DNA of 62,000 bases from assembly GCA_951406725.2 (NCBI GenBank), contig OX597817.1, forward strand, positions 87,998,001 through 88,060,000. The letters run 5' to 3'. The notes under the pieces are model-generated. The model made no database searches, had not been told where the DNA came from, and saw only the letters and a program-made list of their open reading frames with translations. Made by a program: the position numbers and the translations under genes. The stretch comes from Octopus vulgaris (taxonomy: Eukaryota). Positions 60-60,826 of the stretch are shown here, in pieces. The stretch's first letter is position 1. Each line of letters starts with the position of its first letter.

Positions 60-350
60 TTAAGGGTTACTTGTGCATACTTGGATTGTACCAAAATCTT
101 TGACAAGGTTAACTACAGAATATCATGTTAAACATTGAATAATAGTTGGCATCTGTTTTATGCAAAACCAAAGTTAAATTGTAATGGCCAACAGATCCCT
201 ATCAGCAAGTCTGTAGAAATAAGCAGAGTGCAACATGGTACTTTTATGAGGCCTGTTTTGTTCTTGTTGTCAGACAGGGTTAAAAGTATACATTCAACCA
301 GACTGAGCAGTTATGCTAAACAACACTAAAATGCTGCTACAGATCAAGAC
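60..350 (+). mobile_element. Decayed LINE reverse-transcriptase remnant (CR1/jockey-like)
   Basis: AYLDCTKIFDKV and VQHGTFMRPVLFLL...LSSYA resemble the RT motifs FLDxxKAFDKV, GVPQG and FADD. Confidence 0.55.
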
Positions 351-29964: not shown

Positions 29965-30009
<45 letters not shown>

Positions 30010-33000: not shown

Positions 33001-36000
33001 GTAGCCTGCAGAAGGGTATCATAAAAGTTGTCCTTCTGATCATTTGGTAGTCCCGCTTGTGGGGCATAGGCTGAGATAATCATAGCTGTGCCACTCTGTA
33101 GGACCAACCTGAGCTTAAGCACTCTATCACAAACCCTGACAACCTCTATGACCTTATCCACCCATTCCTCCGCAAGGAGAATGCCTACACCCCCTACACC
33201 TTCCGCGTTACCTTGCCAGTAGAGTTTGTACCTAAGTGCCTTGCCCGTGAGGACCCTAGCCGAAGCATCTCTCCATCTTACCTCTTGTATGCAGCATACA
33301 TCAACCTGTCTTCTCTCTAGCATCTCTACAATCTCACTAGACTTGCCTGTCAATGTACCAACATTGATAGTGCCAACTCTGAAAACTGGGAAGGAGATGT
33401 GGGGGGGACGGGGGGATTCAGCGCCTGAGAAGAGGAGGGTTGTTGTGGTGGTGATAGTTTTCGTGGTATTTTTCTTTTGATCTCTCTTCCAACCTGACCA
33501 CGCCGTGGGCAGGAGCTGGTGTTAGCAGTGGACATTCGTTATCGTCACTGAGTAACATAATTAGGTAGAGGAAAGAAATACAGATATTCTAGAGTTGAGT
33601 TGGGAGGGGGGGTCCAGTTGAGGCGGGTAATATAGGGGAGCAACCAGTGGGGAAGGTTGGGGTAAGGAGGAACGATGGCAGGAAGGGTTGGTGTAGGTTC
33701 GTAAGAAATAAAAACGTAGGATATTACGAGGCGGGAGGGTACTAAAAGGGGATGGTCGGATTGAGGCAGTGTCAGGAGGAAGCGTAAGATCGGTGGGCAG
33801 TTGATGAGCTATGGCGCTAGCAGCTTGTCTTTTCACAGTGAAAGCATATGAGGAGAAGGGGTAGTGGGGGGAGGAGGAGGGAGTAGGGCGTATCCGGTGT
33901 AGATGAGTAGGGCGTATCCGGTGTAGATGGTGAGAACAGGGTATACTGGTATTGGTGGTGGGGGTGAGAACAGTGTTCACCGGTATTGGTGGTGGCGGTG
34001 AGAACAGTGTTCACCGGTATTGGTGGTGGGGGTGAGAACAGTGTTCACCGGTATTGGTGGTGGGGGTGAGAACAGTGTTCACCGGTATTGGTGGTGGGGG
34101 TGAGAACAGTGTTCATCGGTATAATGGGGGGGGGCGGGCGCACCGCCAATGGCGGAAAGATGGGAAAAGATGGGATTACGGCTTGAGGTAGCCTAAGGTT
34201 AAATTTCGTAGAGAGAGAGATAGGAAAGATAAATCAAGTTATGGCGAAGGCTTGAAAGTAGCCTAAAAGGTTAAATTTTCGTAGTGAGTGAGATGGGTAA
34301 GACGAATCAAGTTATCAATGTATGAATAAACGTAGTAACAACGAATAAAAATAGTAAGATAAATTTTTAAGAACTTGCTGCGGGCATCGACCGGGAGTTG
34401 AAATTGAAGAAGAAGAAAGTAAGTTGAATTGGGAATTTAAATTGCAGAATCGTAATGGTAATGGCGATTTTCAAGTTTTAGCATAAGAAGAAGAAGAGGA
34501 GGAAAGACCGCCAATGGCGGAAAGATGGGAAAAGATGGGATTACGGCTTGAGGTAGCCTAAGGTTAAATTTCGTAGAGAGAGAGATAGGAAAGATAAATC
34601 AAGTTATGGCGAAGGCTTGAAAGTAGCCTATTTATATATATTATTATCTTCTGCAATACAAGGCAAACTTATGAAATTCAAGGCAAACCGAATACAGAAA
34701 GCATCATTAATACTTCAGTATTGCATTTCATCTAAAATATATATGCTCAGATATTAAACAAATCTTGCTCCAATCATTAAAAGATTTGAAGAGGAAATGA
34801 TTTCTGAACCCAAGCAATGTTAGGGAGGGTTAAGGGGCAGACACTTACACCTTGTTACTAATAAAATCAATTCAAATTGGAATTTAGAAGTTCTCTTCAA
34901 AGTGACTGACACACTGAAGAGTGTCTTTAATGATGAAATGCCATTATTTTATGGTATTGCTTAAATCAGACAAAAAGTGATCAATATTTTATTTATTCCA
35001 CCAATTATTATTTGTAAATATGAAAAACGAAAATTAACAAACCAAAGTTTGATAGTTCTGCAAATAAATTCATACAAGATTTACCTTAAATTTTACAGTT
35101 AAGAATATATAAAGTTTTTTAAAAAATATCAAAATGTTTATCATATGTAATACTAATGACAACTTTAATTAGAATAATCTTAAAAGTATAGAGTAAATAA
35201 CAGAACTCCCAGCATCTTTCACCCTTTACCTTGATCACTTTCTCCCCTGCATTTTCAATGTTTCTTCTTCACATATAACTCACTGCATTTCTTTATCCAG
35301 CACTCATTGTCCATTTATTTACTTCATATTATATAATTACATTACAAGCAATCTCAATAAGAAACTGACAATTATATTCAATCCACATGAATGAAAGAGG
35401 AAAAAAAGATTTCCTATATGAATTCCCACTGAATATGAAGAACCACAGTAGTCTAAGCCAAAATAAAGGCAACCAGAGAGAAATATTTTGTCACTCATCA
35501 ATGCATTTATTTTTACCTTAAAAGAAGCATTGTTACTTACCAATTCAGGGCACTGGCAGACAAAAGCAGAAAAATTACATAATTTTTTATGTACTGAGAT
35601 CTTGAAAACATTATGAAAAAATTCACACCAAAGACCAGTATCTAAATATTTATGACTCCTACAGTAAGAGCTTCTTAGTATTCAAATTAGTCTGTAAATG
35701 CTTATTTATTCACATTGTTTTTAACTGATTGTGCATTATCTCATATCTACGAGAATTTGATGATGTAATTGTCTATTTTAAAATAACTCTGTAGGGTAGA
35801 CGTGAGAAACCAGATCTGGCCAGTTTGAACATAGAATATGTAGAATATTTTGGGGTGGATATGGCCAGTTTAAATACTGAAGGGTTAAAGATGCTATTAA
35901 TAGGAAAATTGTCTCCTTAAGATAACTATGGAAGTAAATAAAAGTGATTTTTGGATAGATGGAAGCAGAAATTTGAGAATTTTCAATCCACAGAAATTTT

Positions 36001-39000
36001 GGAATTTTTTAAAGAATGCTATCAATATTGAGAGGCACAGGAGTGGCTGTGAGTTAAGTGGCTTGCTTACCAACCACATGGTTCCGGGTTCAGTCCCACT
36101 GCGTGGCACCTTGGGCGAGTGCCTTCTACTATAGCCTTGGGCCGACCAAAGCCTTGTGAGTGAATTTGGTAGACGGAAACTGAAAGAAGCCCGTCGTATA
36201 TATGTATATATATGTATGTGTGTGCGTATATGTTTCTGTGTCTATGTTTGTCCCCCCAACATTGCTTGACAACCGATGCTGGTGTGTTTATGTCCCTGTA
36301 ACTTAGTGGTTCGGCAAAAGAGACCGATAGAATAAGTACTAGTCTTATGAAGAATAAGCCCTGGAGTTGATTTGCTCGACTAAAGGCGGTGCTCCAGCAT
36401 GGCCACAGTCAAATGATTAAAACACATAAAAGGATAAAAGAGCAATATAACTCAGTCCTCTTCAGCACTACACAGCAGGTTTGGTTTGGTTTGGTTTGGT
36501 TTGGTGTGGTGTGGTGTGGTTTGGTTTGGTTTGGTCTGGTTTAGTTGGTAGCACTTTTGAGGAAAACAGTTGAAACTGTTGTTGTTTAACCACAGATCAG
36601 TAAACTATGATCAAAAGCTTTCTAACCATGACAGTGCAGACTTTACATACATCTAGGACTACATTATAGTATTCAATGTGTTTATTGTTATAACACAGTT
36701 GTGGTATGATTTGAGAGAGAGAGTTAACTCTCTCAGTGTAGTAAATATGTAAAAACAAATGAAGTACAATGAACTCACTCTTGATTTTCTATCAAATATT
36801 GTCCCTGATTATAAAACATGGGCACGCAATGTCCAATGATATGTATAACAGCTTTGGTATAGTATAAGCTGTTCAGTTTGGAGAGTAAGGGGATTCCATG
36901 AGTAATGAACTCAGCAACACTGAAATCAAGAAAAGAAAATGATTTAACAATAAAAATATTTTTCATAAACAACAATATACATAAAAAAATAATTTCTAAT
37001 GGGTATTTCAGATTTAGTTTGTAAAATACTATTTTTCAATAAGAACGTAGAAAAAGAATCTTTCCAATGATGAATGATTCATCATCATCATCATCATCAT
37101 TATCATTTAACATCTGTTTTCCATGCTAGCATGGGTTGGATGGTTTGACTGAGGTCTGGAGAGCCAGTGGCTGCACCAGGCTCCAATCTGATCTGGCGAT
37201 GTTTCTACAGCTGGATGCCCTTCCTAACGCCAACCACTCCTAGAGTGTAATGGATGCTTTCTACCTGCCACCGGCACAGGAGCCAGTCGGGCAGACCTGG
37301 CATCAATCACGTTCAGATAGTGCTTTTTACGTGCCACCAGCATGGGAGGCGGGGGCTACAACAGAATATCACAAAAGTGATCCTTCTGTTCATTTTGTAG
37401 GCCCGCTTGTGGGGTGTAGGCAGAGATAATTGTAGCTATACAATTCTGCAAGACTAGCCTGAGTTTAAGTACTCTATCATACAACCTCACTACCTCTATG
37501 ACCTTATCCACCCATTTCTCTGCAAGAAGTATGCCCACACCAACTATTCCATCACTATTACCTTCCCAGAAGAGTTTATACCTATATGCTTTCTAATAAA
37601 TAAATTAATGATTTGAAAAGAAATAAGATTTGTAAAATGAGTCCTAATTACAACCCAAAATTCATTTCTTCATCAACTTCCACTTTTTGACCCAAATATG
37701 TTAGCTTTTTATCAGATAGTTCCTTCTTATGAACCTCTATTTCACCAGCATCATTTAATCTCTGATGATCATGATCAACATCATTGAATAATACCCATTT
37801 TTCCTTGCTTGCATGGGTCAGAGAGAACTTATTGAGACAGATTTTCTACAGCTTTTCCTCTCACCAACCCTCACCTGTTTTCAAGTAAGGTAATATTTCT
37901 CCAGGGCCACATGTTTATCACAGAAGACTGGAAACGAACAACATTTCTTGTATGACAGAAGGGAGAAGAGTTCAAACTACCAACACACTTTAACCAGTTC
38001 TTATAACTTCAAATTCAGGTTCGATAATATCAAATACATGTCAAGTTGCTTCTAAATATATAAGAAACTTATAAAGCCAATACTTACTCGTGTCCATATT
38101 TTGTCATGGTCATGGCAACGTACATTGCAATTGGGTTATCAACTTTTAATCCTTGTTGGACAGAAGCTAAAAATGTATCTTTTCTCAGTTCTGGAATATT
38201 ATCCATGTCCACTAAATTAGTGGAAGGCTCAAATGATGAAGGGCGTGGCAAGGTATCATTGTGGAGATGAAGCTTAAACACAAGTTCCCAAGCCCAGCTG
38301 CTGAACTGTTGTTCATTGGTTTGCTGCTGACGCACTACTAACGCCACCTGTGGTACACATGATAAAATTATGGTAATTATTTCAAATAAGTAGTTGCTAT
38401 ACATTATAACTATATTATTTTGAAAGAAATATTTATGATATTTTTTTACAAAGCAAAAAAACCTGCTTTCATGAAAAATTGAGGAGACTTTCAAAGAACC
38501 AATATAGGGAACCCTACCTGCTTAACACCTTCCATAAAGACTGAACCTAAGTGTTTGGATGTTATATAATTGTGATAAGCTTCAACTAATACACAAGCCA
38601 CATATTGATGGATCCAGAGAGGAAGAGCAAGATCTGTGTTCTGAAAAGAAAGCATATGAATAATTAATAGATATTGTTGAAAATAAAAAGCAGCTGATAA
38701 CAGTTTTAATTTTTCTCTGGTGGAGAAAAGGGAGAATTGGTTTGAATACCATAAATCCTCGAGTATAGTCCGCCCTTGAGTATAATACGCAGGGGATTTT
38801 TAGGCGGCTGTACCTCTGAAAAACCTAAACCTTGTGTATAATATGCACCACTTCTCTAACTTGAGTTGTGCGTAATTAAGCCAGCAGCACCTAGTCGAAC
38901 AAACACTTCCCCGCATGCATATTACAATAATGGGAATGTAAATATGTTTGCAAATTGTTTTTGTTACATGTTATTCTGTGTTCTGAATACTTTTATTTTA

Positions 39001-42000
39001 ATAAATGTTGCTTACTGCAAGTTATGGATGATTCTTTTATGATTTCATTGCTTTCAGGCTTAGCTTAAGGTATTTTTGTGCCCGACATCACAAAATGCGT
39101 CTGAATAAACATTGCCGAACAGCAAATAGAGACTCGAATATTGCTTAGAAAATATTTCTCATTTTTAACCTCGTATATAGTAAGCAATAGGGATTTTGAC
39201 CTTTAAATTTTGGGGAAAAAAGTGTGGATTATACTCGAGGATTTACGGTACTTGCATCAAATGAACAATTCTAAAGGTACAGAAAGCTCAGATGGTGGTG
39301 TTAAACTGGGCCCTAGATACCACATACTCAATTTCACTCATTAGGTTTGGACGAGCCAAAACTATGGTGGAAGTAACCTGCACGAAGTGCATGCAATGGT
39401 ACTGACCTACAAGCATGTGACTGTGTATCAAGCTAAATAACTACTCAGTCATGCATGTGGCCAAAATACATCAGTTTCTATTTTCTTTCTATTCACAAAT
39501 ATTTTTATATTGGTTTCAAACATTTGCACAAGGCCAGCAAGTTCAGCAAGAGAAGGTAAGTCAATTACATTGACCCCAGTGCTTAACTGGTACTTATTTT
39601 ATCGACCTTGAACGAATGAAAGACAAAACTGGCCCCGACACATTTGAGCACAAAGCATAAAAACAGACAAAATACTACTAAGCATTTTTGTCCAGGGCAA
39701 TAACAATTGTGCCAGCTCACTGCCTTCATAAATATTTTTATATTATCATTGTTGTTAAGGTGGCATGCTGGACAAAAGCTTAGCAGCATTTCTTCTGTGT
39801 TCAAATGCCACAGAGGTCAACTTCTCTCTCCCTTCAAATGTGCTGGCTTTGCACCAAAAGTTAGAAAGAATTATTATTATAATTGTTGCAAGATATTAAA
39901 GGAAATCCTACAGGATTGTCCAACAGCTCAATTTAACTTTTAAATCACCACTAAATACTTCCCTAGTCTCCAAAATAAGAACAACTTTCTCAATGATTTA
40001 ATATTCAGATGATCTTGTACACATTAGAGAAGAAGTGGACACATAGGTAGAATATCAATCAAATATTTCATATATTCTTAAAGTGAGTAGGTTTGTTTGC
40101 TTTTTTTTTAGTTTTTTTTTTTAGAGGGTATTAAAGGTTGATGCGTCTCATGTAACTAATTGGATTTTTTAAAAATTAAATTCATTTCAATCTAGATTGT
40201 TCAATAAAATATTTGAGAATAAAACAAAACAATAATTTTAAAATAAAATAAAAACAACAAAAATAATAATGCAAATTTTAGGAGAAAAATCGAATCAAAA
40301 ATATTTCATACCTCTTTATTAAGTCCCCAGTTCAGATTGGAAAGAATTGTTCGTCCCAGAAGGTGTTCTGTTGAACTAAGATCTGTACTCACTAACCAGG
40401 AGCGAAGAATAGCCAAATCTGCATTCTCCAACTGCCAGTCATACATGGGTAATTCTTTAAAAAGATATAGCGCCATCTGTCAAAAATAAAGAAAGAACTA
40501 TGTTTATGAATTACACACATAAGATTAGCACCTTTATTTTCCCTCCCTCCTTTCAATTCAGTCCAGTTTCTTAAAAACAATAAACAGTGACGATGATGTA
40601 TATATTCATTCTTAATACATTCTGATAGATTTAAACATGAATATGTTAATCACACCTACTCTTTTCAGATAATGTATGTTCAAGACAAGTCATTGAGGTA
40701 AGGGGACTTTGAGACACCGGAGGCTCTTGTTCATAGAATTCAGTAAAACAATTACCTGCTGATGCATTATCACTGAGCTGTTGAATCACCACTGCAATGT
40801 ACTAGGACAAACCAAGTTGATGAACACATCTTTCAGCACACTATGCTTATACAAGAGTACACAGTACTGCAAATTAAGACACTTGACAATTTTGCCTTAC
40901 TTCCTCTATTTAAAGCAGCTGATTCCCAACTCACAGTAACTATGGGCATATGAAAACTGTCTTGACATTGAATACACTGCTTCGCTGTAGACAAGACACG
41001 AACCACTGATCCTTTGGTTAGCAGTGCAGAACCCAATAAACTTAATTAACCAAAGCTCTCTCTAATCAGTAAAATGCACTGCCCTCTTACTATTCAGTCC
41101 TCCAGTGCAACATTTTGACCTGCTACAAAACAAATGCAATAAAAAGTATTGGTTCATCCCATAAATAATGCAGTTTTTTTTACACTTTTATTTTTCGAAA
41201 TTAAGATAAACTAAGTTCTTTTTTAATCTAAAATATACTCTTCTTCATTTTCTACCATGCTCTTCCATCTGTCCTCCAGTACTGTTCTGACCTCATCTAC
41301 AGAATTCATATTTTTTCCGTCCAAATGATTTTGAAGACTGCGGAATAAATGATAATCAGAAGGGGCAATGTCTGGCGAATATGGTGGGTGGGGCATCATT
41401 TCCCATTCAAACTGCTTCAGCCTTTGGAAAGTCATCCTCGCTGTATGTGACCAAGCATTATTCTAATGAAGGAACACCTTTCATCTTGAAACCAAAGATG
41501 TTCATTTATCTTCGAGTGCAGGTGTCGATAAATGGTTGAACAACCAAATCCAAGCTTCTCTGTTAGCTCTTCAGCAGTTACAATGGGAGTCTGTTCCACA
41601 GAGTTTACAGGACATCCTTGTCAAACTCTACAGATCTTCCAGGACAAAGCTTATCTTCTAGACTGTAGTTTCCAACTCTGAATTTCTGGAACCACAAATG
41701 ACACTGGCTCACACTTATTGTCTAATTCCCATATATTGCATTAATATTCCTTGCATTTTCTGTTCCATTGTTGCCATTATTGAACTCATAAAGCAAAATA
41801 TGCTGCATATGTTCCTTGTCACGTCCATTATAGCTTTGAAAAAAAAAACTGTTAAAATCAAACAGCAGTCTTCAAAATTGCACTAAGAATATGGAAAAGG
41901 TAAAATTACTACCTGCTTTTATAGTAAGTTGATGCAGGTAGTTTATCCCATCACCACCCAACTTTTAGCTCATGCAATTGAAAAAACCACATTATTTATG

Positions 42001-42752
42001 GAATGACCCAATACTAAGAGAAAATTTTTGATATATCAAAAGTTGGATAATGGTTTTTGTAAAGAATAACATGAATTTCAGTTGCTTCAAATTCTTTTGG
42101 AAAGGAAACCTTCACAAATGAAAACAGAGACATCAGGCTATTCTTTTATCTTTTATTTGTTTCATTCATTGGACTGCAGCCAAGCTGGGACACAACCTTG
42201 AAAGGTTTAGTTGCACAAATTGACTCCACTGTCTTATTGTTCTTAAGCTTGATACTTTTTTCTATTGGTAACTTTTGCCAAACTGCTAAGTTAGAGCAAT
42301 ATAAACAAACCAACACCAGTTGTTGAGTGTAGGTGGTGGACAAACAAAAATACACACACACATGTGGGGGAGAAGTGTTTTTGTGTGTGTGTGTAACAGA
42401 CGTCTTTTAGTTTCCATCTATCAAATCCACTCATGAGGCTTTGATCTGCCTAGGGCTGTAGTAGAAGACACTTGCCCAACATGGCATACAGTGGGACTGA
42501 ACCAAAGACCACATGGTAAGGAAACAAACTTCTTAACTACATAACCATGCCTGAAGCTTCTGTTAGAAAAATATATATAATCTAATCTTAGGCGCTGATG
42601 TGGTTGTGTAGTAAGAGACTTGCTTCACCACCACATTGCTCTTGGTTCAGTCCCACTGTGTGGAATCTTAGGCAAGTGTCTTCTACTATAGCCTCGGGAC
42701 AACCAAAGCCTTGTGAGTGGATTTGGTAGGCAAAAACTGAAAGAAGCCTGTC

Positions 42753-42796
<44 letters not shown>

Positions 42797-43759
42797 TTAT
42801 GTGTGTGAGTCATTATGTCTGTGTTTATCCCCACCACCACTTGACAACCATTGTTAGTGTTTCTATGTCCCCATAACTTAGTGGTTCAGCAAAAGTGACC
42901 GACAGAATAAGTATTTGGTTTAAAAAAAATAAGAACTGGGTCAATCCATTCAACTAAAAAATCTTCAAGGCAGTGCCCCAGTAAGGCCACAGTCTAATTA
43001 CTGAAACAAAAGATAAAAGATAAACAATGAGAGAAGTCACTACTTTTGCCTTTCTAGCAAAATTAATGTTTGGTAATGGATTAAACCAGTTGTCTTTTAA
43101 GGTTTTAGAGCACCAACAAAATTTCATGCAATGTTTTCTCAAGACATATAAAGAAAAATCTTCACATATTACATTTCATTATATCGTAGACATAGATCAA
43201 TGAAAGAGATCAGAAACGAACAGAAATGAATTCCATTCTCAATAAACTCACCCCTCCTATATTTCCTCGGACATCTCGTAGTTTATGAATCAAAAATGAA
43301 ATGGTGACTGGATGGACTTGGGCAATGGCAGACAACAGCTCACGGCCAACTTTAGAACAGAAATCTTTAGTATGATCATATAGGTACGCAATCTGAAAAG
43401 AGAGAATATTTCTTAATATTGCATGTGTGTGTGTGTGTATTTGTATGTATATAAGCATAAACATATATATGTCTATGTATATATATATGTATATATTTGT
43501 GTGTGTTTGTATATATGCATAAATGCTGAAAAGTTCCTAGCTTTAAGGGTATCATGAAAAGCATGGTTGAAGGCCCAACCTTTTGAGGGCTTAGAAAAAC
43601 TGCAGGAGGGCTGCAATAAATGTGTGAATCTGAGAAGGGAATTTGTTGAATAAAATCATAACTAACCAATCCTCCAGTATTTTCTTTTATCCAATGCCAG
43701 GAGCATTTCAGCACCCCCTTGTATATATATTTCCCAGTGTATTATATGCATACCTATGG

Positions 43760-56700: not shown

Positions 56701-59700
56701 CATCCAGAAGGTCTAATGATGGAGGAGGTGCCTGAGGACCCTACCCCAATAACCCTTTCGGGAATAGTAGACAGAGATAGATGTATCTAAATATTATTTT
56801 TCATAACATTGGAAAACTCAGTTGTCAGTTGTTAGATTAGTACAAAATTGTTCAATGTAAAATGTCAAATTTTAAATCATTACCTTTCACTGATAATATT
56901 TAAGTTATCAACTTTACTTTAAATGCTATTAAACTACCAACAAAGAATAATTACTAATGAAAAATTAATGAAATCTTATCTAATGTATCTAATCTAAAAG
57001 AAAATTAGGATACACAATTTCTTAAAAACACATGATATAACAGAAATAACATGATTTTTATGTTCACCTTTAATGAATGCATTATTTTAATCATCATTTT
57101 CTAGTTTTATTTAAAATTAAAATTCATTTAATATGACAATTAATTTGATTGAGTAATTAACCCTTTTGATAGCATACTATCTGAGACTGCCACTAGTTCT
57201 CTGATATAAATTTTCCCAAGTCATCTCAAAACCTTCAAACACCAGATTAATCATGACAAAGTTATTTTAAGTAAATCCTTCATTAATTTTGCAATTAATT
57301 GAAACAAATGTAGTGTGTTTCAACAGAAATATGGTAACAGAAGGGTTAAAGACACTGTTGTTTAAAGAAACAGAAAAATGTGAATTATTGATAAAAATTA
57401 TCTCACTAGTCTTTCTGTCCATATTCGCAAATTTTCAACAAAGTTATGGTCATCAATTGGTCGTCTGTGCATAGAAAACAAGATTGAGATGCAGTCCTTC
57501 AGTCTCTGAATCTGGTGAAGAACAGTCATGCTCTGCTTTGCTTGAACTCGAACTAAAAAGAGAATTTGTCATCATATAGATAAGAGATATCACAAATACA
57601 ATATTTCTCAATAATATCTGAACCATTTTTCAAAATCAAGATCTATTTAGTATGACTTTCCTACATTATTAACTCTAAACATTCATAGGAACTCTAAAAA
57701 ATAATTACATATTCAACTGAACCATTTTTAAGACAACCAGCAAAGTGAAACGTTTCTGAAAAATATTCATTTTGAAACTGTGCTTTCCATGTTTAGGGTT
57801 CAGTTTTTTTAATAAAAATTAGTATTTATTACATTTCAAAATACAAACGTTATAACAATTGTTTATAAACTGATTGATTGTATGGAGATTTAATAGCTAC
57901 AAGACTAAAGTTTGGGTTTCTTATCAGATCATCATCATCATTTAATGTTCATTGTCCATGCTGTACACAAATAAACAAATTTACGAATACCATCTCATGC
58001 TAGCATAGAATATCAAGCGGACGGAATTACTAAACTCATAGTTATTCCGATTTTGAATGGATGGACTTGGTGCAAACTTAACTGTATCTATTATTATTAT
58101 TATTATTAATATTAATAGTAATTTATATTGACTTTTATAGGTTTATAATTTTATGAACTGAACTATGGTTTTTTTATTATTATTTTCAGGTATAGGTATG
58201 ATTTTAATTTAAATAGTAGTGCGCATACATCTCCCTATGTGTTAGTTTTTAGAACTATTAGGCAAATATGTAAAATAACTGTGCTTATTAATATTAATAT
58301 ATACACTGATATATATTTTGTTTTATTTTGTTTTGTTTACCTTGCATTATTGTATCAATGAGTATTATATATATTATATATGTGTAGCATTATGGAGTTT
58401 ATGCACAAGTTTTTATATTTTACATTTTTATATTTATATGTATATGAAAAAATAATTTTTTCACAATTATAACAAATTAAATTCTCTGAAGAGGCCGTGG
58501 GGCATCCTTGTTAATGCCTCATTTATACCTGCCTTTATGGCTTATAGGTTAAATGAGGTATGACTGCCCTTACTGCCGAAACAGCTGTCAGATATGATAT
58601 AATTACATATTATATTTTATATTTTATATTTCTATTTCCTTGTCTATTTATATTTACTATATATTTTGTATAATGCCTTTACTGATATGTAATGGTGTAA
58701 TAAAGTATTGATTGGGTATCATCTGAGAGTTGATGTTTTATTGATTTAAGTATGTTTCTCCATTTTCTAATTTTGTAATATAATCCTCAAGCCGTAATCC
58801 CATCTTTTCCCTTCTTTCCGCCATTGGCGGTCTTTCCTCCTCTTCTTCTTCTTATGCTAAAACTTGAAAATCGCCATTACCATTACGATTCTGCAATTTA
58901 AACTCCCAATTCAACTTACTTTCTTCTTCAACTCCCGGTCGATGCCCGCAGCAAGTTCTTAAAAATTTATCTTACTATTTTTATTCGTTGTTACTACGTT
59001 TATTCATACATTGATAACTTGATTCGTCTTACCCATCGAAAATTTACGAAAATTTAACCTTTTAGGCTACTTTCAAGCCTTCGCCATAACTTGATTTATC
59101 TTTCCTATCTCTCTCTCTACAAAATTTAACCTTAGGCTGCCTCAAGCCGTAATCCCATCTTTTCCCTTCTTTCCGCCATTGGCGGTCTTTCCTCCTCTTC
59201 TTCTTCTTATGCTAAAGCTTGAAAATCGCCATTACCATTACGATTCTGCAATTTAAACTCCCAATTCAACTTACTTTCTTCTTCAACTCCCGGTCGATGC
59301 CCGCAGCAAGTTCTTAAAAATTTATCTTACTATTTTTATTCGTTGTTACTACGTTTATTCATACATTGATAACTTGATTCGTCTTACCCATCGAAAATTT
59401 ACGAAAATTTAACCTTTTAGGCTACTTTCAAGCCTTCGCCATAACTTGATTTATCTTTCCTATCTCTCTCTCTACAAAATTTAACCTTAGGCTGCCTCAA
59501 GCCGTAATCCCATCTTTTCCCTTCTTTCCGCCATTGGCGGTCTTTCCTCCTCTTCTTCTTCTTATGCTAAAGCTTGAAAATCGCCATTACCATTACGATT
59601 CTGCAATTTAAACTCCCAATTCAACTTACTTTCTTCTTCAACTCCCGGTCGATGCCCGCAGCAAGTTCTTAAAAATTTATCTTACTATTTTTATTCGTTG

Positions 59701-60826
59701 TTACTACGTTTATTCATACATTGATAACTTGATTCGTCTTACCCATCGAAAATTTACGAAAATTTAACCTTTTAGGCTACTTTCAAGCCTTCGCCATAAC
59801 TTGATTTATCTTTCCTATCTCTCTCTCTACAAAATTTAACCTTAGGCTACCTCAAGCCGTAATCCCATCTTTTCCCTTCTTTCCGCCAGCCCCCCCACCC
59901 CCACCACCAATACCGATGAACACTGTTCTCACCCCCACCACCAATACCGGTGAACACTGTTCTCACCGCCACCACCAATACCGGTGAACACTGTTCTCAC
60001 CCCCACCACCAATACCAGTATACCCTGTTCTCACCATCTACACCGGATACGCCCTACTCATCTACACCGGGTACGCCCTACTCCCTCCTCCTCCCCCCAC
60101 TACCCCTTCTCCTCATATGCTTTCACTGTGAAAAGACAAGCTGCTAGCGCCATAGCTCATCAACTGCCCACCGATCTTACGCTTCCTCCTGACACTGCCT
60201 CAATCCGACCATCCCCTTTTAGTACCCTCCCGCCTCGTAATATCCTACGTTTTTATTTCTTAGGAACCTACACCAACCCTTCCTGCCATCGTTCCTCCTT
60301 ACCCCAACCTTCCGACACGTTAAAATGCTCGAACCGATCGTGACGATGCCGGACCCTCCGGCCCCTGTGCAGGTGGCACGTAAAAAGCACCCAATCCACT
60401 CACGGAGTGGTTGGCGTTAGGAAGGGCATCCAGCCGTAGAAACTCTGCCAGATTCAGACTGGAGCCTGGAGCGGCCCCTGGCTTCCCAGACCCGGTCAAA
60501 CCGTCCAACCCGTGCTAGCGCGGAAAGCGGACGTTAAACGATGATGATGATGATGATGATAATACACAATACTATAAATTAGAGTTGTATTAAAATTTGA
60601 AAAATTAATTTAATTTAATAAACAAATATTTAATAAATATTTGAAATGTAAATAATCCAACAATTCCAAATTTTGCAAATTCATTTGAAGAATATCTTAA
60701 CATGATGAAATGACTACACATTTGAAGATAGCATTTATAATTCACTCACTTGGGCCATCAGCTCGAATCTTTTGAAGAATGGGTAAGCTTTTGAATAAAT
60801 TATGAATGTAAGATTCTACTTGAAGC
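489..60826 (-). CDS. EPG5: EPG5 (ectopic P-granules protein 5 homolog, autophagosome-lysosome tether), partial multi-exon CDS of 32 exons; both gene ends lie outside the window
   Basis: 32 GT-AG exons join in one open frame (4567 nt = 1 + 1522 codons). Peptides such as [69 protein letters not shown] and [17 protein letters not shown] are colinear with human EPG5 as recalled from memory. Confidence 0.93.
2285..2366 (-). CDS. EPG5: EPG5 exon w31
   Basis: ttgcag|[27 protein letters not shown]|gtcagt; 82 nt. Confidence 0.88.
4408..4539 (-). CDS. EPG5: EPG5 exon w30
   Basis: tcttag|[44 protein letters not shown]|gtgagt; 132 nt. Confidence 0.9.
4714..4929. mobile_element. mariner-type MITE
   Basis: TIR tgagggagtgctgaaa/tttcagcactcccttg with TA flanks; a related copy lies at about 43515-43722. 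Confidence 0.75.
6253..6564. mobile_element. hAT (Charlie-like) MITE
   Basis: TIR cagtggttctcaa/ttgagaaccactg; 8-bp TSD gtcaaagg/gtctaagg. Confidence 0.88.
6652..6843 (-). CDS. EPG5: EPG5 exon w29
   Basis: ttgcag|EFVQKMPDQ...LMSPHFLPN...DMAFMLLSK|gtaagt; 192 nt. Confidence 0.92.
9055..9223 (-). CDS. EPG5: EPG5 exon w28
   Basis: tttcag|TLIKLTRA...[22 protein letters not shown]|gtaagt; 169 nt. Confidence 0.93.
10829..10971 (-). CDS. EPG5: EPG5 exon w27
   Basis: ttatag|[14 protein letters not shown]...[19 protein letters not shown]|gtaagt; 143 nt. Confidence 0.9.
12426..13644 (-). mobile_element. Tc1-like (DD34E) DNA transposon, defective
   Basis: TIRs caggggttggacaaaata/tattttgtccaacccctg with TA on both sides. 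Transposase pieces [23 protein letters not shown] and [15 protein letters not shown] lie in broken frames. Confidence 0.93.
14332..14409 (-). CDS. EPG5: EPG5 exon w26
   Basis: tgatag|[26 protein letters not shown]|gtaagt; 78 nt. Confidence 0.85.
14800..15250 (-). mobile_element. RTE 3' UTR fragment
   Basis: (CAT)n tail plus the conserved 3' UTR core. Similar short copies lie at about 7370-7560, 8820-8995, 18895-19140, 27080-27200, 54840-54990 and 55380-55550. Confidence 0.75.
15740..16255 (+). mobile_element. 5'-truncated, decayed RTE copy
   Basis: Degenerate C-terminal ORF (GRGKPWKT-like) followed by the 3' UTR and tgatga tail. Confidence 0.75.
16301..16391 (-). CDS. EPG5: EPG5 exon w25
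   Basis: tttcag|[30 protein letters not shown]|gtatat; 91 nt. Confidence 0.88.
16829..17000 (-). CDS. EPG5: EPG5 exon w24
   Basis: ttctag|[19 protein letters not shown]...[12 protein letters not shown]|gtaata; 172 nt. Confidence 0.9.
17074..17235. repeat. About 21-bp minisatellite, roughly 8 copies
   Basis: tttatgatcacctta(g/t)tgatt units, about 70 nt upstream of the w24 acceptor. Confidence 0.85.
17250..18060 (+). mobile_element. Possible decayed 5' part of an RTE-BovB-like LINE
   Basis: GC-richer block with tctggcaactcctg...ctggtgccaaactgta...gcatgggcaaca, which I recall from RTE-BovB-type 5' regions. No intact ORF. Confidence 0.35.
18384..18531 (-). CDS. EPG5: EPG5 exon w23
   Basis: ttgcag|[49 protein letters not shown]|gttagt; 148 nt. 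The distal donor is required to keep the frame. Confidence 0.83.
19168..19545 (+). mobile_element. tRNA-derived SINE family A, representative copy with internal duplication
   Basis: ggcggtgagctggcagaa...gagttcaaattccgcc. Other copies lie at about 2590-2720, 3760-3880, 5600-5790, 13820-13990, 28020-28200, 39525-39725, 48870-49080, 50390-50520 and 53480-53645. Confidence 0.85.
20993..21116 (-). CDS. EPG5: EPG5 exon w22
   Basis: tttcag|[41 protein letters not shown]|gtgggt; 124 nt. Confidence 0.9.
21524..21638 (-). CDS. EPG5: EPG5 exon w21
   Basis: ttttag|[37 protein letters not shown]|gtgagt; 115 nt. Poorly conserved, but it supplies the required phase 1 to phase 2 link. Confidence 0.8.
23433..23584 (-). 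CDS. EPG5: EPG5 exon w20
   Basis: tcacag|[28 protein letters not shown]...GENT|gtgagg; 152 nt. Confidence 0.88.
25263..25429 (-). CDS. EPG5: EPG5 exon w19
   Basis: tttcag|KSAVKLKL...[34 protein letters not shown]..|gtatat; 167 nt. Confidence 0.93.
25595..25828 (-). CDS. EPG5: EPG5 exon w18
   Basis: tttcag|[28 protein letters not shown]...VEQAWK|gttagt; 234 nt. Confidence 0.9.
25927..26209. mobile_element. piggyBac-like TTAA MITE
   Basis: ttaacccttt...aaagggttaa ends. Related copies lie at about 9947-10150, 26522-26749, 35620-35888, 49660-49868 and 57158-57348. Confidence 0.7.
27695..27791 (-). CDS. EPG5: EPG5 exon w17
   Basis: tgatag|[32 protein letters not shown]|gtaaat; 97 nt. Confidence 0.88.
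28938..29035 (-). CDS. EPG5: EPG5 exon w16
   Basis: tattag|[32 protein letters not shown]|gtaatt; 98 nt. Confidence 0.85.
29146..29266 (-). CDS. EPG5: EPG5 exon w15
   Basis: ttgcag|[40 protein letters not shown]|gtaaag; 121 nt. Confidence 0.88.
29430..29660 (+). mobile_element. tRNA-derived SINE family C, representative copy
   Basis: ggaggcacatggcttagtggttagg...tgtgttcttgagcaaaac. Other copies lie at about 8453-8720 (+), 9640-9920 (-) and 28535-28830 (+). Confidence 0.8.
30234..33353 (-). pseudogene. RTE endonuclease-reverse transcriptase ORF with one premature stop at 30567-30569
   Basis: APE motifs ([33 protein letters not shown]), RT motifs ([22 protein letters not shown]) and C-terminal [16 protein letters not shown] continues in frame to the stop at 30234. 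Confidence 0.93.
33948..34117. repeat. 34-bp tandem repeat x5 in the RTE 5' region
   Basis: ggtattggtggtgggggtgagaacagtgttcacc at 33948, 33982, 34016, 34050 and 34084, with no spacers. Confidence 0.95.
34142..34630 (-). repeat. RTE 5' monomer array, 365-bp unit, about 1.3 copies
   Basis: accgccaatggcggaaagatggg recurs at 34142 and 34507. Confidence 0.9.
35541..35552 (-). CDS. Candidate 12-nt alternative microexon of EPG5
   Basis: tttttctgcttttgtctgccag|TGCCCTGAATTG|gtaagt; frame-preserving and stop-free between w14 and w15. No transcript evidence available. Confidence 0.4.
36044..36440 (+). mobile_element. tRNA-derived SINE family B, representative copy
   Basis: A/B-box-like head (gtggctgtgagttaag...ggttcagtccc), microsatellite middle and aaaagata tail. 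Other copies lie at about 11080-11420 (+), 15460-15560 (-), 49185-49510 (+) and 55090-55235 (-). Confidence 0.85.
36478..36545. repeat. (GGTTT/GGTGT)n pentanucleotide microsatellite
   Basis: Direct inspection. Confidence 0.95.
36779..36919 (-). CDS. EPG5: EPG5 exon w14
   Basis: tttcag|[15 protein letters not shown]...[15 protein letters not shown]|gtgagt; 141 nt. Confidence 0.9.
37081..37590 (-). mobile_element. Deleted RTE copy: endonuclease fragment fused to 3' UTR and tail
   Basis: [18 protein letters not shown]...AYTPQAGL (37356-37538) directly abuts the RTE 3' UTR and (CAT)n tail (37081-37340). Confidence 0.85.
38088..38347 (-). CDS. EPG5: EPG5 exon w13
   Basis: ccacag|[29 protein letters not shown]...[15 protein letters not shown]|gtaagt; 260 nt. 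Confidence 0.92.
38518..38640 (-). CDS. EPG5: EPG5 exon w12
   Basis: tttcag|[25 protein letters not shown]...FMEGVKQ|gtaggt; 123 nt. Confidence 0.9.
38749..39248. mobile_element. Tc1/mariner-superfamily MITE (Tc2/pogo-like ends)
   Basis: TIR ccataaatcctcgagtata/tatactcgaggatttacgg flanked by TA. Confidence 0.85.
40312..40476 (-). CDS. EPG5: EPG5 exon w11
   Basis: tgacag|[15 protein letters not shown]...[12 protein letters not shown]|gtatga; 165 nt. Confidence 0.92.
41147..41700 (-). mobile_element. mariner (DD34D) transposase remnant
   Basis: [21 protein letters not shown]. The end sequence ttggttcatcccataaataatg is also seen at about 61850. Confidence 0.85.
42143..42553 (-). mobile_element. 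SINE family B copy (minus arm of an inverted pair)
   Basis: Reverse complement of the family B layout seen at 36044. Confidence 0.85.
42588..43023 (+). mobile_element. SINE family B copy (plus arm of an inverted pair)
   Basis: ggcgctgatgtggttgtgtagtaag...ggttcagtcccactg...gataaaagataa. Confidence 0.85.
43252..43392 (-). CDS. EPG5: EPG5 exon w10
   Basis: tttcag|[28 protein letters not shown]...GNIGG|gtgagt; 141 nt. Confidence 0.92.
43935..44760 (+). mobile_element. RTE endonuclease-domain fragment (same family, older, no 3' end)
   Basis: ORF 44000-44782, [17 protein letters not shown]...GDFNG...INFIL, is colinear with the N-terminus of the 30567-33353 ORF. Confidence 0.9.
44758..44909. repeat. 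25/26-bp tandem repeat x6
   Basis: ggatat(t)caatcctgttttcctttag repeated at the RTE/Penelope junction. Confidence 0.95.
44884..45130 (-). mobile_element. Penelope-like element GIY-YIG endonuclease fragment
   Basis: [24 protein letters not shown]...YIGCS and, after a frameshift, [32 protein letters not shown]. Confidence 0.75.
45561..45712 (-). CDS. EPG5: EPG5 exon w9
   Basis: ctttag|[29 protein letters not shown]...TITVEVFE|gtaggt; 152 nt. Confidence 0.9.
45890..46520 (+). mobile_element. Decayed LINE remnant
   Basis: GC-richer block with fragmentary RT C-terminal-like peptides. No intact ORF. Confidence 0.35.
47648..47730. repeat. (GA)n microsatellite
   Basis: Direct inspection. Confidence 0.95.
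47958..48112 (-). CDS. EPG5: EPG5 exon w8
   Basis: tttcag|[25 protein letters not shown]...CKAELK|gtttca; 155 nt. Confidence 0.88.
49949..50092 (-). CDS. EPG5: EPG5 exon w7
   Basis: ttacag|[13 protein letters not shown]...[23 protein letters not shown]|gtaagc; 144 nt. Confidence 0.92.
50780..50936 (-). CDS. EPG5: EPG5 exon w6
   Basis: tttcag|[21 protein letters not shown]...[13 protein letters not shown]|gtaagt; 157 nt. Confidence 0.92.
51370..51890 (-). mobile_element. RTE 3' UTR fragments with an internally repeated module
   Basis: catcatcgtcatttaa...gatgcccttcctaatgccaaccact, then about four copies of a ggtgcttttac-gccac-ggcac module. Confidence 0.75.
53029..53149 (-). CDS. EPG5: EPG5 exon w5
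   Basis: tttcag|[40 protein letters not shown]|gtgagt; 121 nt. Confidence 0.9.
55706..55805 (-). CDS. EPG5: EPG5 exon w4
   Basis: ctgcag|[33 protein letters not shown]|gtaata; 100 nt. Confidence 0.88.
56185..56387 (-). CDS. EPG5: EPG5 exon w3
   Basis: ttatag|[36 protein letters not shown]...ILQPI|gtaagt; 203 nt. Confidence 0.92.
56525..56790 (+). mobile_element. Decayed RTE/Rex3-like LINE 3' fragment
   Basis: Translates to [11 protein letters not shown]...[25 protein letters not shown]. Confidence 0.65.
57407..57552 (-). CDS. EPG5: EPG5 exon w2
   Basis: ttttag|..[48 protein letters not shown]|gtgaga; 146 nt. Confidence 0.88.
58090..58784 (+). mobile_element. Probable Penelope-like element terminal (pLTR-type) fragment carrying the hammerhead
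   Basis: T-rich stretch with a minimal hammerhead and a downstream AATAAA near 58698. No ORF is visible and the boundaries are approximate. Confidence 0.45.
58483..58592 (+). ncRNA. Type I hammerhead ribozyme (Penelope-like minimal type with extended stem II)
   Basis: tct-CTGAAGA-GGC...GCC-GAAA-C-AGCT-G-TC|AGA; all core nucleotides present; predicted cleavage after 58589. Confidence 0.8.
58785..59888 (+). repeat. 355-bp tandem monomer array, about 3.1 copies
   Basis: cctcaagccgtaatcc at 58785, 59140, 59495 and 59850. Confidence 0.95.
58785..60560 (+). mobile_element. Internally deleted non-autonomous derivative of the same RTE family
   Basis: 5' monomers, 34-bp repeats and 5' UTR are joined at 60313/60314 directly to the 3' UTR and (TGA)n tail. 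Near-identical to 33651-34630 and 29965-30235. Confidence 0.93.
60750..60826 (-). CDS. EPG5: EPG5 exon w1 (window numbering, transcription order)
   Basis: tttcag|[27 protein letters not shown]|gtgagt; 77 nt. Confidence 0.85.

What the first reader, a model, noticed from the sequence alone, without database searches (positions are those of the whole stretch)
58483..58592. Intact type I hammerhead ribozyme with an unusually long stem II, antisense in an EPG5 intron
Seen: tct (58483-85), CUGAAGA (58486-92), GGC...GCC closing stem II, GAAA (58578-81), C-AGCU-G, then UC|AGA. Stem II is an 85-nt multi-helix arm, including atgcctcattta/taaatgaggtat (12 bp), gggca/tgccc and an apical gcc-tttat-ggc. 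Known: a 3-bp stem I plus a 2-bp stem III with a palindromic loop (acagctgt) is the minimal hammerhead of Penelope-like elements, which cleaves efficiently as a dimer. Inference: this is a potentially active self-cleaving RNA, and the long stem II is atypical for the minimal type. It lies on the strand opposite to EPG5, so it would cut antisense or element transcripts rather than the pre-mRNA.
Basis: partly seen in the sequence, partly recalled or inferred. Interest (0 to 1): 0.75.

Follow-up and report, generated by a model that had tools for sequence, protein, structure and literature searches.

The report
Retroelement hammerhead ribozyme with long arm
The motif is a genuine hammerhead-ribozyme core with an unusually long, very stable 85-nt second helix, and it is the best-conserved part of a young, ORF-less retroelement present in over a thousand copies that inserts the way Penelope-like elements do; whether it actually cuts is untested.

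Summary
Positions 58483-58592 (+) hold UCU / CUGAAGA / 85-nt helix II / GAAA / C-AGCU-G / UC|AGA. A descriptor finds it once in the window and never in 200 shuffles.

It is not a solitary intronic motif. It sits about 190 nt from the 3' end of a 5'-truncated copy (58009-58782) of a roughly 2.46 kb ORF-less retroelement. The 2.8 Gb genome gave 1374 first-look candidates, many identical over 141 nt. Copies have variable 5' truncation, end at (TA)n, form head-to-head inverted pairs and carry an optional 3' extension. These are Penelope-like (PLE) insertion hallmarks.

The hammerhead is the most conserved block of the element (Fisher P about 1e-6). None of the 13 core sites varies. Five other element families in this genome combine a minimal hammerhead, a 26-59 nt helix II and a (TA)n 3' end.

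Caveats:
- No Rfam hammerhead model matches.
- Helix I has only 3 bp.
- The lowest-energy fold hides the core.
- Within-family covariation has no power.
- The autonomous partner was not identified, and cleavage and the EPG5 context are untested.

Verdict: a new variant (long helix II) of the known PLE minimal hammerhead. Moderate interest.

The parts
58009..58782 (+). 5'-truncated, short-3'-end copy (774 bp) of a roughly 2.46 kb ORF-less interspersed retroelement. A full copy is L065:246-2700.
   Evidence: BLAST against 30 genomic copies gives 93-97.5% identity, with the 3' end fixed at 58777-82 and variable 5' ends. Full-length copies share a sharp 5' end 2.2 kb upstream of the hammerhead. 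The largest ORF is 119 aa and has no Pfam match.
58483..58592 (+). Type I hammerhead motif (110 nt).
   Evidence: Read directly from the sequence. The descriptor hit is unique and absent from 200 shuffles. The 13 core sites carry 0 changes in 546 site-copies.
58483..58485 (+). Helix I, 5' strand (UCU). It pairs with AGA at 58590-58592.
   Evidence: Only 3 contiguous bp; older subfamilies add 3-4 interrupted A-U pairs.
58486..58492 (+). Core C3-A9 (CUGAAGA).
   Evidence: Invariant in all 19 distinct sequences of alignment A1.
58493..58577 (+). Helix II: an 85-nt three-segment hairpin closed by G10.1-C11.1.
   Evidence: MFE -38.4 kcal/mol, z -6.1. 98.5% of cells are paired across 19 distinct copies. 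All five shared substitutions are wobble/Watson-Crick interchanges.
58578..58581 (+). Core G12 A13 A14 A15.1 (GAAA).
   Evidence: invariant.
58581..58588 (+). Helix III palindrome ACAGCUGU. It forms 2 bp plus an AGCU loop in a monomer and 8 bp between two molecules.
   Evidence: RNAcofold predicts the intermolecular helix.
58589..58590 (+). Predicted cleavage site, after C17 (58589).
   Evidence: Inferred from the hammerhead numbering. No read-end evidence is available because the runs are held as contigs only.
58593..58782 (+). 3' module: a variable linker (58593-58689) and a conserved terminal block (58690-58782) ending ...UUUUGUA at the insertion end.
   Evidence: Conservation profile. 3' junctions of 30 copies. 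Word depth is higher and other families join at 58663, 58688 and 58740.

Best explanation
The motif is the hammerhead module of a non-autonomous retroelement that is copied by the machinery of Penelope-like elements (PLEs). The window holds one dead, 5'-truncated copy.

Shown:
- The hammerhead core is complete.
- Helix II is an extremely stable 85-nt hairpin.
- Helix III is a palindrome.
- The motif is the most conserved block of a young family with more than 1000 copies.
- The family inserts at (TA)n with 5' truncation, head-to-head inverted partners and an optional 3' extension.
- The same layout (minimal hammerhead with a long helix II, then 40-200 nt, then a 3' end at (TA)n) recurs in at least five other element families of this genome.

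Inferred:
- In the element's RNA, two hammerheads pair through ACAGCUGU into an 8-bp helix III and cut after C58589. A lone copy stays mostly uncut because helix III (2 bp) and helix I (3 bp) are too weak and a competing 5-bp pairing hides the core.
- Full-length copies start 2.2 kb upstream at a fixed point, not at the cleavage site. Cleavage therefore does not define the ends of new copies.
- The hammerhead plus its long arm is more likely kept because it is part of the 3' module that the reverse transcriptase needs. Self-cleavage would then be a conditional side activity.

My odds: PLE-type hammerhead module of a PLE-mobilised element, 0.7. Measurable cleavage in vitro as a dimer, about 0.55. 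As a monomer, about 0.1.
For: Motif and chance.

Stability.

Dimer.

Copy number and youth: 1374 first-look candidates, and 20 of the 40 scored hits are 100% identical over 141 nt.

Full-length form, no ORF, (TA)n on both flanks.

Insertion signatures:
- Variable 5' ends and a fixed 3' end.
- (TA)n follows most 3' ends.
- All 5 close pairs among the 40 hits are head-to-head, with no tandem and no tail-to-tail pairs.
- In 4 of 4 resolved pairs, one copy has the roughly 200-nt 3' extension and the other does not.
- These match the PLE structure described in PMC8557442.

Conservation:
- Among 19 copies chosen by their 5' end, shared-variant sites are 6/110 in the hammerhead against 152/627 elsewhere (P = 1e-6), and none of the 13 core sites varies.
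- Contigs from four organism labels show no variant at 10% or more inside the hammerhead, except A>G at 58544 and 58546 in two runs.

Other families: 6 motifs observed against 0.15 expected in 98 kb around PLE genes, each 40-200 nt from a (TA)n end. L075 and L089 differ by 4 compensatory pairs out of 16 in helix II.

PLE presence: the genome gave 6136 first-look GIY-YIG candidates, including a young RT + GIY-YIG element with a 781-aa open frame in many copies. This element also ends at (TA)n.
Against: - No Rfam hammerhead model matches.
- Helix I has 3 bp, and the window's subfamily has lost the interrupted extension seen in older copies.
- The active fold (-35.6) is 6.7 kcal/mol above the MFE.
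- There are no compensatory changes within the family, and covariation is no better than shuffles.
- The element has no RT gene and no pLTR or tandem copy in the loci sampled.
- Its 3' module has no significant similarity to the one canonical PLE whose 3' UTR I could read, and that UTR has no CUGANGA.
- The optional 3' extension is about 200 nt, not the 30-40 nt PLE 'tail'.
- No junction or contig end marks 58590, although contigs cannot show ends.
- In the one PLE studied biochemically, hammerhead cleavage was not needed for insertion (PMC11167929).
Confidence: 0.7

Rival explanations
1. The hammerhead core is a non-catalytic relic. What is conserved is the 85-nt hairpin and its surroundings, acting as a binding site for the mobilising reverse transcriptase/endonuclease or as another structural signal. 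The RNA is never cut at C58589 in vivo.
For: Helix I is marginal and has eroded in the young subfamily. The MFE fold hides the core. Full-length copies do not start at the cleavage site. No junction appears at 58590. Hammerhead mutants did not affect insertion by the Anolis PLE, and no RNA-seq ends were found at its cleavage site (PMC11167929). The module boundary seen in contigs lies at 58476, right at the 5' edge of the motif.
Against: All 13 core nucleotides, G10.1-C11.1 and the helix III palindrome are invariant in 42 copies, while neighbouring positions vary. The same core plus a palindrome recurs in sequence-unrelated families, which a mere hairpin handle would not require.
Confidence: 0.2
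2. The roughly 2.46 kb 'element' is not an independent non-autonomous family. It would be the untranslated pLTR/UTR portion of an autonomous PLE whose coding part I did not sample.
For: PLE units are complex tandem and inverted structures.
Against: Dozens of copies share the same sharp 5' end, flanked by (TA)n or unrelated DNA. There is no RT or GIY-YIG similarity within 2.46 kb and no similarity to 30 loci around GIY-YIG genes.
Confidence: 0.06
3. It is a non-LTR retrozyme: a tandemly repeated hammerhead unit that propagates through small circular RNAs.
For: Type I hammerhead with a short palindromic helix III, as in metazoan retrozymes (PMC7229834). Retrozymes are proposed to be PLE derivatives (bioRxiv 10.64898/2026.07.22.740005).
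Against: No head-to-tail copies were seen: all 5 close pairs are inverted and there are no internal repeats. The unit is 2.46 kb, against the 170-400 nt I recall for retrozyme units (not checked in the papers read here). The copies are dispersed and 5'-truncated.
Confidence: 0.03
4. Chance resemblance: an AT-rich repeat that happens to contain CUGAAGA and GAAA flanking a hairpin.
For: Rfam models do not match. There is no covariation within the family.
Against: 0 of 200 shuffles produce the motif. The core is invariant and conservation is significant at P = 1e-6. Five further families have the same architecture, 6 observed against 0.15 expected.
Confidence: 0.01

Closest known systems
Minimal hammerheads of Penelope-like elements (Cervera & de la Pena 2014, PMC4209133; the Lunse et al. 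dimer-cleaving variants, known to me only as cited in PMC6765202)
   Same: Type I topology. Full core with G10.1-C11.1. Helix III is reduced to 1-2 bp with a palindromic loop, so two copies can form an extended helix III. Helix I is short and open. The motif lies near the 3' end of a retroelement with PLE insertion signatures. It is highly uniform within a young family, as in D. virilis.
   Different: Helix II is an 85-nt, roughly 33-bp three-segment hairpin instead of 6-8 bp. [quoted passage not shown] The carrier has no RT/GIY-YIG ORF and no pLTR in the copies sampled.
Naiad/Chlamys 'HHR_half_core' cases (Craig et al. 2021, PMC8557442)
   Same: CUGANGA and GAAA lie in a PLE 3' UTR but too far apart (35-50 nt) for the standard descriptors. 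The elements target (TA)n.
   Different: Those cases were left unclassified, with no helix model. Here the two halves are 85 nt apart and are joined by a demonstrably stable, conserved helix with helices I and III in place.
Metazoan non-LTR retrozymes (PMC7229834; bioRxiv 10.64898/2026.07.22.740005)
   Same: Non-autonomous, PLE-related, type I hammerhead with a weak palindromic helix III.
   Different: Retrozymes are tandem arrays of small units, which I recall as 170-400 nt, expressed as circRNAs. This element is a dispersed 2.46 kb unit with a single hammerhead, and no tandem copies were seen.
Schistosoma Sm-alpha/Sj-alpha SINE-like hammerhead elements (as summarised in PMC6765202)
   Same: High-copy, ORF-less retroposon carrying a type I hammerhead.
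   Different: From memory, those are about 330 bp, carry a canonical hammerhead with loop-loop contacts near the 5' end, and have a pol III-type promoter. Here the hammerhead is 3'-proximal, minimal and has a long arm.
Rfam Hammerhead_1 (RF00163)
   Same: Same core and helix order. The model does find six other hits in this genome, three of them 108 nt long.
   Different: This sequence does not reach E<=10 against any Rfam hammerhead model.

Membership tests
Hammerhead ribozyme (type I) | Conserved core C3 U4 G5 A6 N7 G8 A9 / G12 A13 A14 / A15.1-U16.1 / H17 | tested here: met
   CUGAAGA at 58486-92, GAAA at 58578-81, U58588, C58589. Invariant in 42 copies.
Hammerhead ribozyme (type I) | Three helices around the core, with the 5' and 3' ends in helix I | tested here: met
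   Descriptor hit with helix I of 3 bp, helix II closed by 3 bp (about 33 bp in all) and helix III of 2 bp. Helix I is at the lower limit.
Hammerhead ribozyme (type I) | Match to a curated covariance model (Rfam RF00163, RF00008, RF02275-7) | tested here: not met
   No hammerhead family at E<=10 in the 6 kb search or the 161-nt search.
Hammerhead ribozyme (type I) | Site-specific self-cleavage 3' of position 17 | not testable with these tools
   Only assembled contigs were available, and these cannot show RNA ends.
Hammerhead ribozyme (type I) | Helix pairing supported by covariation | tested here: inconclusive
   Within the family there are 0 double changes and the score equals shuffles, because the family is too young. 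One-sided changes that keep pairing occur at 8 pairs. A possible variant lower helix appears in contigs of other organisms. An unrelated family pair shows 4 of 16 compensatory pairs.
PLE minimal hammerhead | Helix III absent or 1-2 bp, with palindromic 15.2-16.2 and loop, allowing a dimer | tested here: met
   ACAGCUGU is a perfect palindrome. Cofold gives an intermolecular 8-bp helix and about -9.7 kcal/mol relative to two monomers.
PLE minimal hammerhead | [quoted passage not shown] | tested here: not met
   A9 (58492) is followed directly by G10.1 (58493), which pairs with C58577. The feature is listed in PMC4209133.
PLE minimal hammerhead | Helix II of about 6-8 bp | tested here: not met
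   85 nt with about 33 bp in three segments.
Penelope-like element (autonomous) | ORF with RT and GIY-YIG endonuclease | tested here: not met
   The largest ORF in a full copy is 119 aa with no Pfam hit. The element is therefore at most a non-autonomous dependant.
PLE-type insertion (autonomous or dependent) | Variable 5' truncation with a fixed 3' end | tested here: met
   5' ends are scattered between 58009 and 58466, and 3' ends fall at 58777-82.
PLE-type insertion (autonomous or dependent) | Inverted 5'-truncated copy adjacent to the 5' end (head-to-head) | tested here: met
   L007, L008, L009 and L011. 5 of 5 close pairs are head-to-head. L019 and L037 carry inverted fragments of the 3' extension next to the 5' end of a copy.
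PLE-type insertion (autonomous or dependent) | Microsatellite, (TA)n, target preference | tested here: met
   (TA)n follows most short-form 3' ends and flanks both sides of L065. The canonical RT-GIY-YIG element of this genome ends at (TA)n too.
PLE-type insertion (autonomous or dependent) | [quoted passage not shown] | tested here: inconclusive
   An optional 3' extension exists and is one-sided in 4 of 4 inverted pairs, but it is about 200 nt long.
PLE-type insertion (autonomous or dependent) | pLTR or partial tandem copies | tested here: not met
   No same-strand neighbours among the 40 hits. No internal direct repeat.
PLE-type insertion (autonomous or dependent) | 3' end shared with an autonomous partner | tested here: inconclusive
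   No significant similarity to the 3' 300 nt of the 781-aa PLE. Only a short recurrent CATTTTC-like motif lies near the ends. Other PLE families could not be fetched.
Non-LTR retrozyme | Tandem arrays of short hammerhead-bearing units | tested here: not met
   The only tandem repeat nearby (58785-59888) belongs to a LINE 5' region.

The most novel reading that the evidence does not exclude
The long helix II is not a tolerated insertion. It would be the recognition handle of a (TA)n-targeting PLE system. On this reading, the hammerhead core, the 85-nt arm and the short 3'-terminal block form the minimal module that the reverse transcriptase/endonuclease binds, and several ORF-less families have captured it. 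Long-arm hammerheads would then be a whole class that the standard descriptors and Rfam models miss. That could mean PLE clades reported as lacking hammerheads (the 'half-core' cases) actually have them.
Probability: 0.2. Interest if true: 0.7.

Novelty: new variant of a known kind. Interest (0 to 1): 0.45.

Why it matters
Hammerheads in Penelope-like elements have been known since 2014, but their role is still unclear, and censuses rely on descriptors with a short helix II.

This case shows a complete core split by an 85-nt conserved hairpin, in a family that is young, abundant and apparently still moving. It also shows that at least five other families in the same genome follow the same plan.

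This has three consequences:
1. Hammerhead counts in PLE-rich genomes are probably underestimates.
2. The genome offers a natural series, with helix II from 26 to 85 nt, for asking whether the arm serves catalysis, dimerisation or protein binding.
3. An ORF-less, non-tandem, 2.5 kb PLE dependant differs from both retrozymes and SINE-like hammerhead elements.

For the host locus itself, the copy is an ordinary dead insertion.

Tried and rejected
1. Rfam. No hammerhead model hit in the 6 kb search or the 161-nt search. The miRNA-like hits to the arm are insignificant (E 3-5), so the pre-miRNA reading is not supported.

2. Within-family covariation. No power.

3. Autonomous partner.
- 30 loci around GIY-YIG genes share nothing with the element except TA-rich ends.
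- The 781-aa PLE's 3' UTR has no CUGANGA and no significant similarity to the element's 3' module.

4. pLTR or tandem structure. None found.

5. RNA evidence. All runs offered are Logan contigs of uncertain type (the 'RNA?' label is a guess). They show no begin/end table and no junction at 58590. This gives no evidence either way on cleavage or expression.

6. EPG5.
- Exon-like ORFs on the minus strand (25562-25861, 38087-38494, 43213-43464, 9034-9354) have no Pfam, PDB or informative Atlas match.

7. The search of earlier findings never opened.

8. Retrozyme reading: rejected (no tandems). Chance motif: rejected.

9. The 355-bp tandem repeat next to the element is not part of it.
Full report
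**Observation.**
- UCU at 58483-85 and CUGAAGA at 58486-92.
- An 85-nt segment closed by GGC/GCC (58493-95 / 58575-77).
- GAAA at 58578-81, then C-AGCU-G, U58588, C58589 and AGA at 58590-92.

I wrote a type-I descriptor requiring the core, G10.1-C11.1, at least 3 bp in helices I and II, and a palindromic helix III insert. It finds this site and nothing else on either strand of the 62 kb window, and nothing in 200 dinucleotide-preserving shuffles. The helix II arm alone folds at -38.4 kcal/mol with z = -6.1. The whole 110 nt gives z = -5.1.

**What it belongs to.** The 141 nt around the motif give 1374 first-look candidates in the window's own 2.8 Gb assembly. Of the 40 scored hits, 20 are 100% identical.

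Aligning 30 fetched copies to the window shows a repeat spanning 58009-58782. Its 3' end is fixed at 58777-82 and its 5' ends are scattered from 58009 to 58466. This is the pattern of reverse transcription that starts at the 3' end.

Longer copies continue 2.2 kb upstream to a sharp 5' end shared by dozens of copies. A full copy (L065:246-2700, about 2455 bp) is AT-rich and is flanked by (TA)n on both sides. It has no ORF above 119 aa, no Pfam match and no internal direct repeats. The window copy is therefore a dead, 5'-truncated insertion, and the hammerhead lies on the element's sense strand about 190 nt from its 3' end.

**Insertion signatures.**
- Most copies end ...UUUUGUA(G) followed directly by (TA)n.
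- About 40% of copies continue for another roughly 200 nt (for example L009:2447-2646) and then also end in TA-rich sequence.
- All five close pairs among the 40 best hits are head-to-head, with none tandem and none tail-to-tail.
- In the four pairs I could resolve (L007, L008, L009, L011), one partner has the extension and the other does not.
- L019 and L037 carry an inverted fragment of the extension next to the 5' end of a copy.

Variable 5' truncation, an adjacent inverted 5'-truncated partner, a one-sided extra 3' piece and a (TA)n target are the structural hallmarks described for Penelope-like elements (PMC8557442; PMC11167929). The published 'tail' is 30-40 bp, though, not 200.

The genome is rich in PLEs. 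[quoted passage not shown] This family also ends at (TA)n.

I could not show that it is the partner. Its 3' UTR has no CUGANGA and no significant similarity to our 3' module. Only a short CATTTTC-like motif recurs near the ends of several families, and it is too short to test.

**Is the hammerhead selected?**
- Among 42 non-redundant copies, the 13 core positions carry 0 changes in 546 site-copies. Paired sites show 1.45% and the 31 flanking nucleotides 4.6%.
- The first 30 copies were chosen by similarity to the motif itself, so I repeated the test on 19 copies chosen by their 5' end. Sites with a variant shared by two or more copies number 6 of 110 in the hammerhead against 152 of 627 in the rest of the 3' 740 nt (Fisher P = 1e-6). 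No core site varies.
- The 5' half of the arm is the most conserved 50-nt bin of the element. The linker at 58593-58689 is the least conserved, and the terminal block at 58690-58782 is conserved again.
- All five substitutions shared by several copies inside helix II interchange G.U with G-C or A-U and keep pairing.
- There is no double compensatory change, and the formal covariation score is no better than shuffles. The family is too young for that test.
- Contigs from runs labelled as four organisms carry the element. They show no variant at 10% or more inside the hammerhead, except A>G at 58544 and 58546 in two runs, while the flanks have many.
- Word depth rises about six-fold at 58477. 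Loose ends show other sequences joining at 58476 and at 58663, 58688 and 58740. The hammerhead plus 3' block therefore appears to be a module shared by more copies or families than the upstream body. 5' truncation contributes to this gradient as well.
- Two loose ends (before 58508 and after 58557) would together give an arm of the same 85-nt length. Its lower helix would be replaced on both strands yet remain complementary. They come from different contigs, and one carries a C at U4, so this is only suggestive.

**A class, not a one-off.** A relaxed descriptor run on the 98 kb fetched around GIY-YIG genes finds six further motifs. These have helix II of 26-59 nt and palindromic or near-palindromic helix III inserts (CUCGAG, CGAUCG, CACAUG/CAUGUG, UUGGAACCAA). 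Shuffles predict 0.15. Each lies 40-200 nt upstream of an element end abutting (TA)n, and L076 is again a head-to-head pair. L075 and L089 are diverged relatives, and 4 of 16 predicted helix II pairs differ on both sides while staying paired. Rfam's Hammerhead_1 model, run over the whole genome, also returns three 108-nt hits above its cut-off.

**How it probably works.** Helix III is 2 bp in a monomer but an 8-bp duplex between two molecules. Cofolding predicts that duplex and about -9.7 kcal/mol relative to two monomers. The catalytic fold of the monomer (-35.6) lies 6.7 kcal/mol above an alternative in which UCUGA pairs with UCAGA and buries C3-A6 and the scissile C17.

Helix I has 3 bp. 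Older subfamilies add three or four interrupted A-U pairs that the window's subfamily has lost.

I therefore expect little or no cleavage as a monomer and possible cleavage after C58589 as a dimer, as reported for other PLE hammerheads (PMC4209133 and PMC6765202).

Genomic pairs are inverted, not tandem, so a dimer would have to form between two transcripts. Full-length copies begin 2.2 kb upstream rather than at 58590, so cleavage does not set the ends of new copies. In the only PLE tested biochemically, cleavage was dispensable for insertion.

My preferred reading is that the hammerhead with its long arm is retained as part of the 3' module needed for mobilisation, and that dimer-dependent self-cleavage is a conditional activity whose role is unknown. 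The structural and conservation steps are shown. Cleavage, dimerisation in vivo and protein binding are inferred.

**Comparison and membership.** The motif works like, and by core and helix III belongs with, the PLE minimal hammerheads. It differs in four ways:
- the 85-nt helix II (published examples have 6-8 bp);
- failure against every Rfam hammerhead model;
- an ORF-less, non-tandem 2.46 kb carrier.

It is not a retrozyme, because there are no tandem units. It resembles the unclassified 'half-core' cases noted in Naiad PLEs. I rate it a new variant of a known kind.

**Not settled.**
- The EPG5 intron and antisense claim. The exon-like minus-strand ORFs gave nothing in Pfam, PDB or the Atlas.
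- The host species is not identified. A cephalopod is my guess from genome size, composition and PLE content, and this is untested.
- The earlier-findings tool never opened.

Noticed in passing
window 58785-60563 (+), and 29986-34630 (-): Directly after the element's 3' end lies an internally deleted copy of a LINE. It consists of the 5' region with 3.1 copies of a 355-bp monomer (58785-59888, 99% alike) joined to the LINE 3' end (60314-60563). The same LINE is present with an intact 928-aa endonuclease-RT ORF at 30567-33353 (-), where about 1.4 copies of the monomer lie upstream.
   Followed up: partly
window 58544 and 58546: A>G at about 10% share in the two runs guessed to be RNA (X1, X5), but 0 in the deep runs X16 and X19. 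Both As sit in UA contexts in the upper helix II arm, which would suit A-to-I editing of the hairpin. The runs come from different organisms, so a species-specific subfamily explains it equally well.
   Followed up: no
L074, L079 (and many places listed): A canonical Penelope-like element (RT, weak IBR-like zinc-finger linker, C-terminal GIY-YIG) with a 781-aa open frame in many identical-scoring copies. Its 3' UTR carries repeated TGACGT-containing units and ends at (TA)n. It looks currently active.
   Followed up: partly
L071:626-697(-), L075:39-123(+), L076:451-536(+) and 127-212(-), L079:2961-3021(-), L089:2957-3036(-): Five other element families carry minimal type I hammerhead motifs with helix II of 26-59 nt, 40-200 nt upstream of a (TA)n-abutting 3' end. 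In L076 and L079 they sit tail-to-tail with the canonical PLE across one (TA)n tract.
   Followed up: partly
G000 C7:15930010-15930117(-), C1:98507175-98507282(+), C15:53489332-53489439(-): Three 108-nt matches to Rfam Hammerhead_1 above its gathering score. These would be further long-insert hammerheads. They could not be fetched.
   Followed up: no
3' ends of the element (58760-58782), of its long form (L013:1150-1130 region), of L075/L089 and of the 781-aa PLE (L080): A short CTCCATTTTC/GCATTTTC-like motif recurs 10-25 nt before the (TA)n junction in several otherwise unrelated families. It may be a shared priming or recognition signal. It is too short to test statistically here.
   Followed up: no
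window 12550-12801 (-) and 41223-41435 (-): ORF fragments with mariner/Tc1-type transposase C-terminal wording (judged by eye from the translations, not scanned).
   Followed up: no
window 36171-36441, 11180-11417, 42139-42362; L013:1129-900: An abundant SINE-like repeat follows the (TA)n tract after several long-form copies and occurs three times in the window. It is unrelated to the hammerhead element.
   Followed up: no
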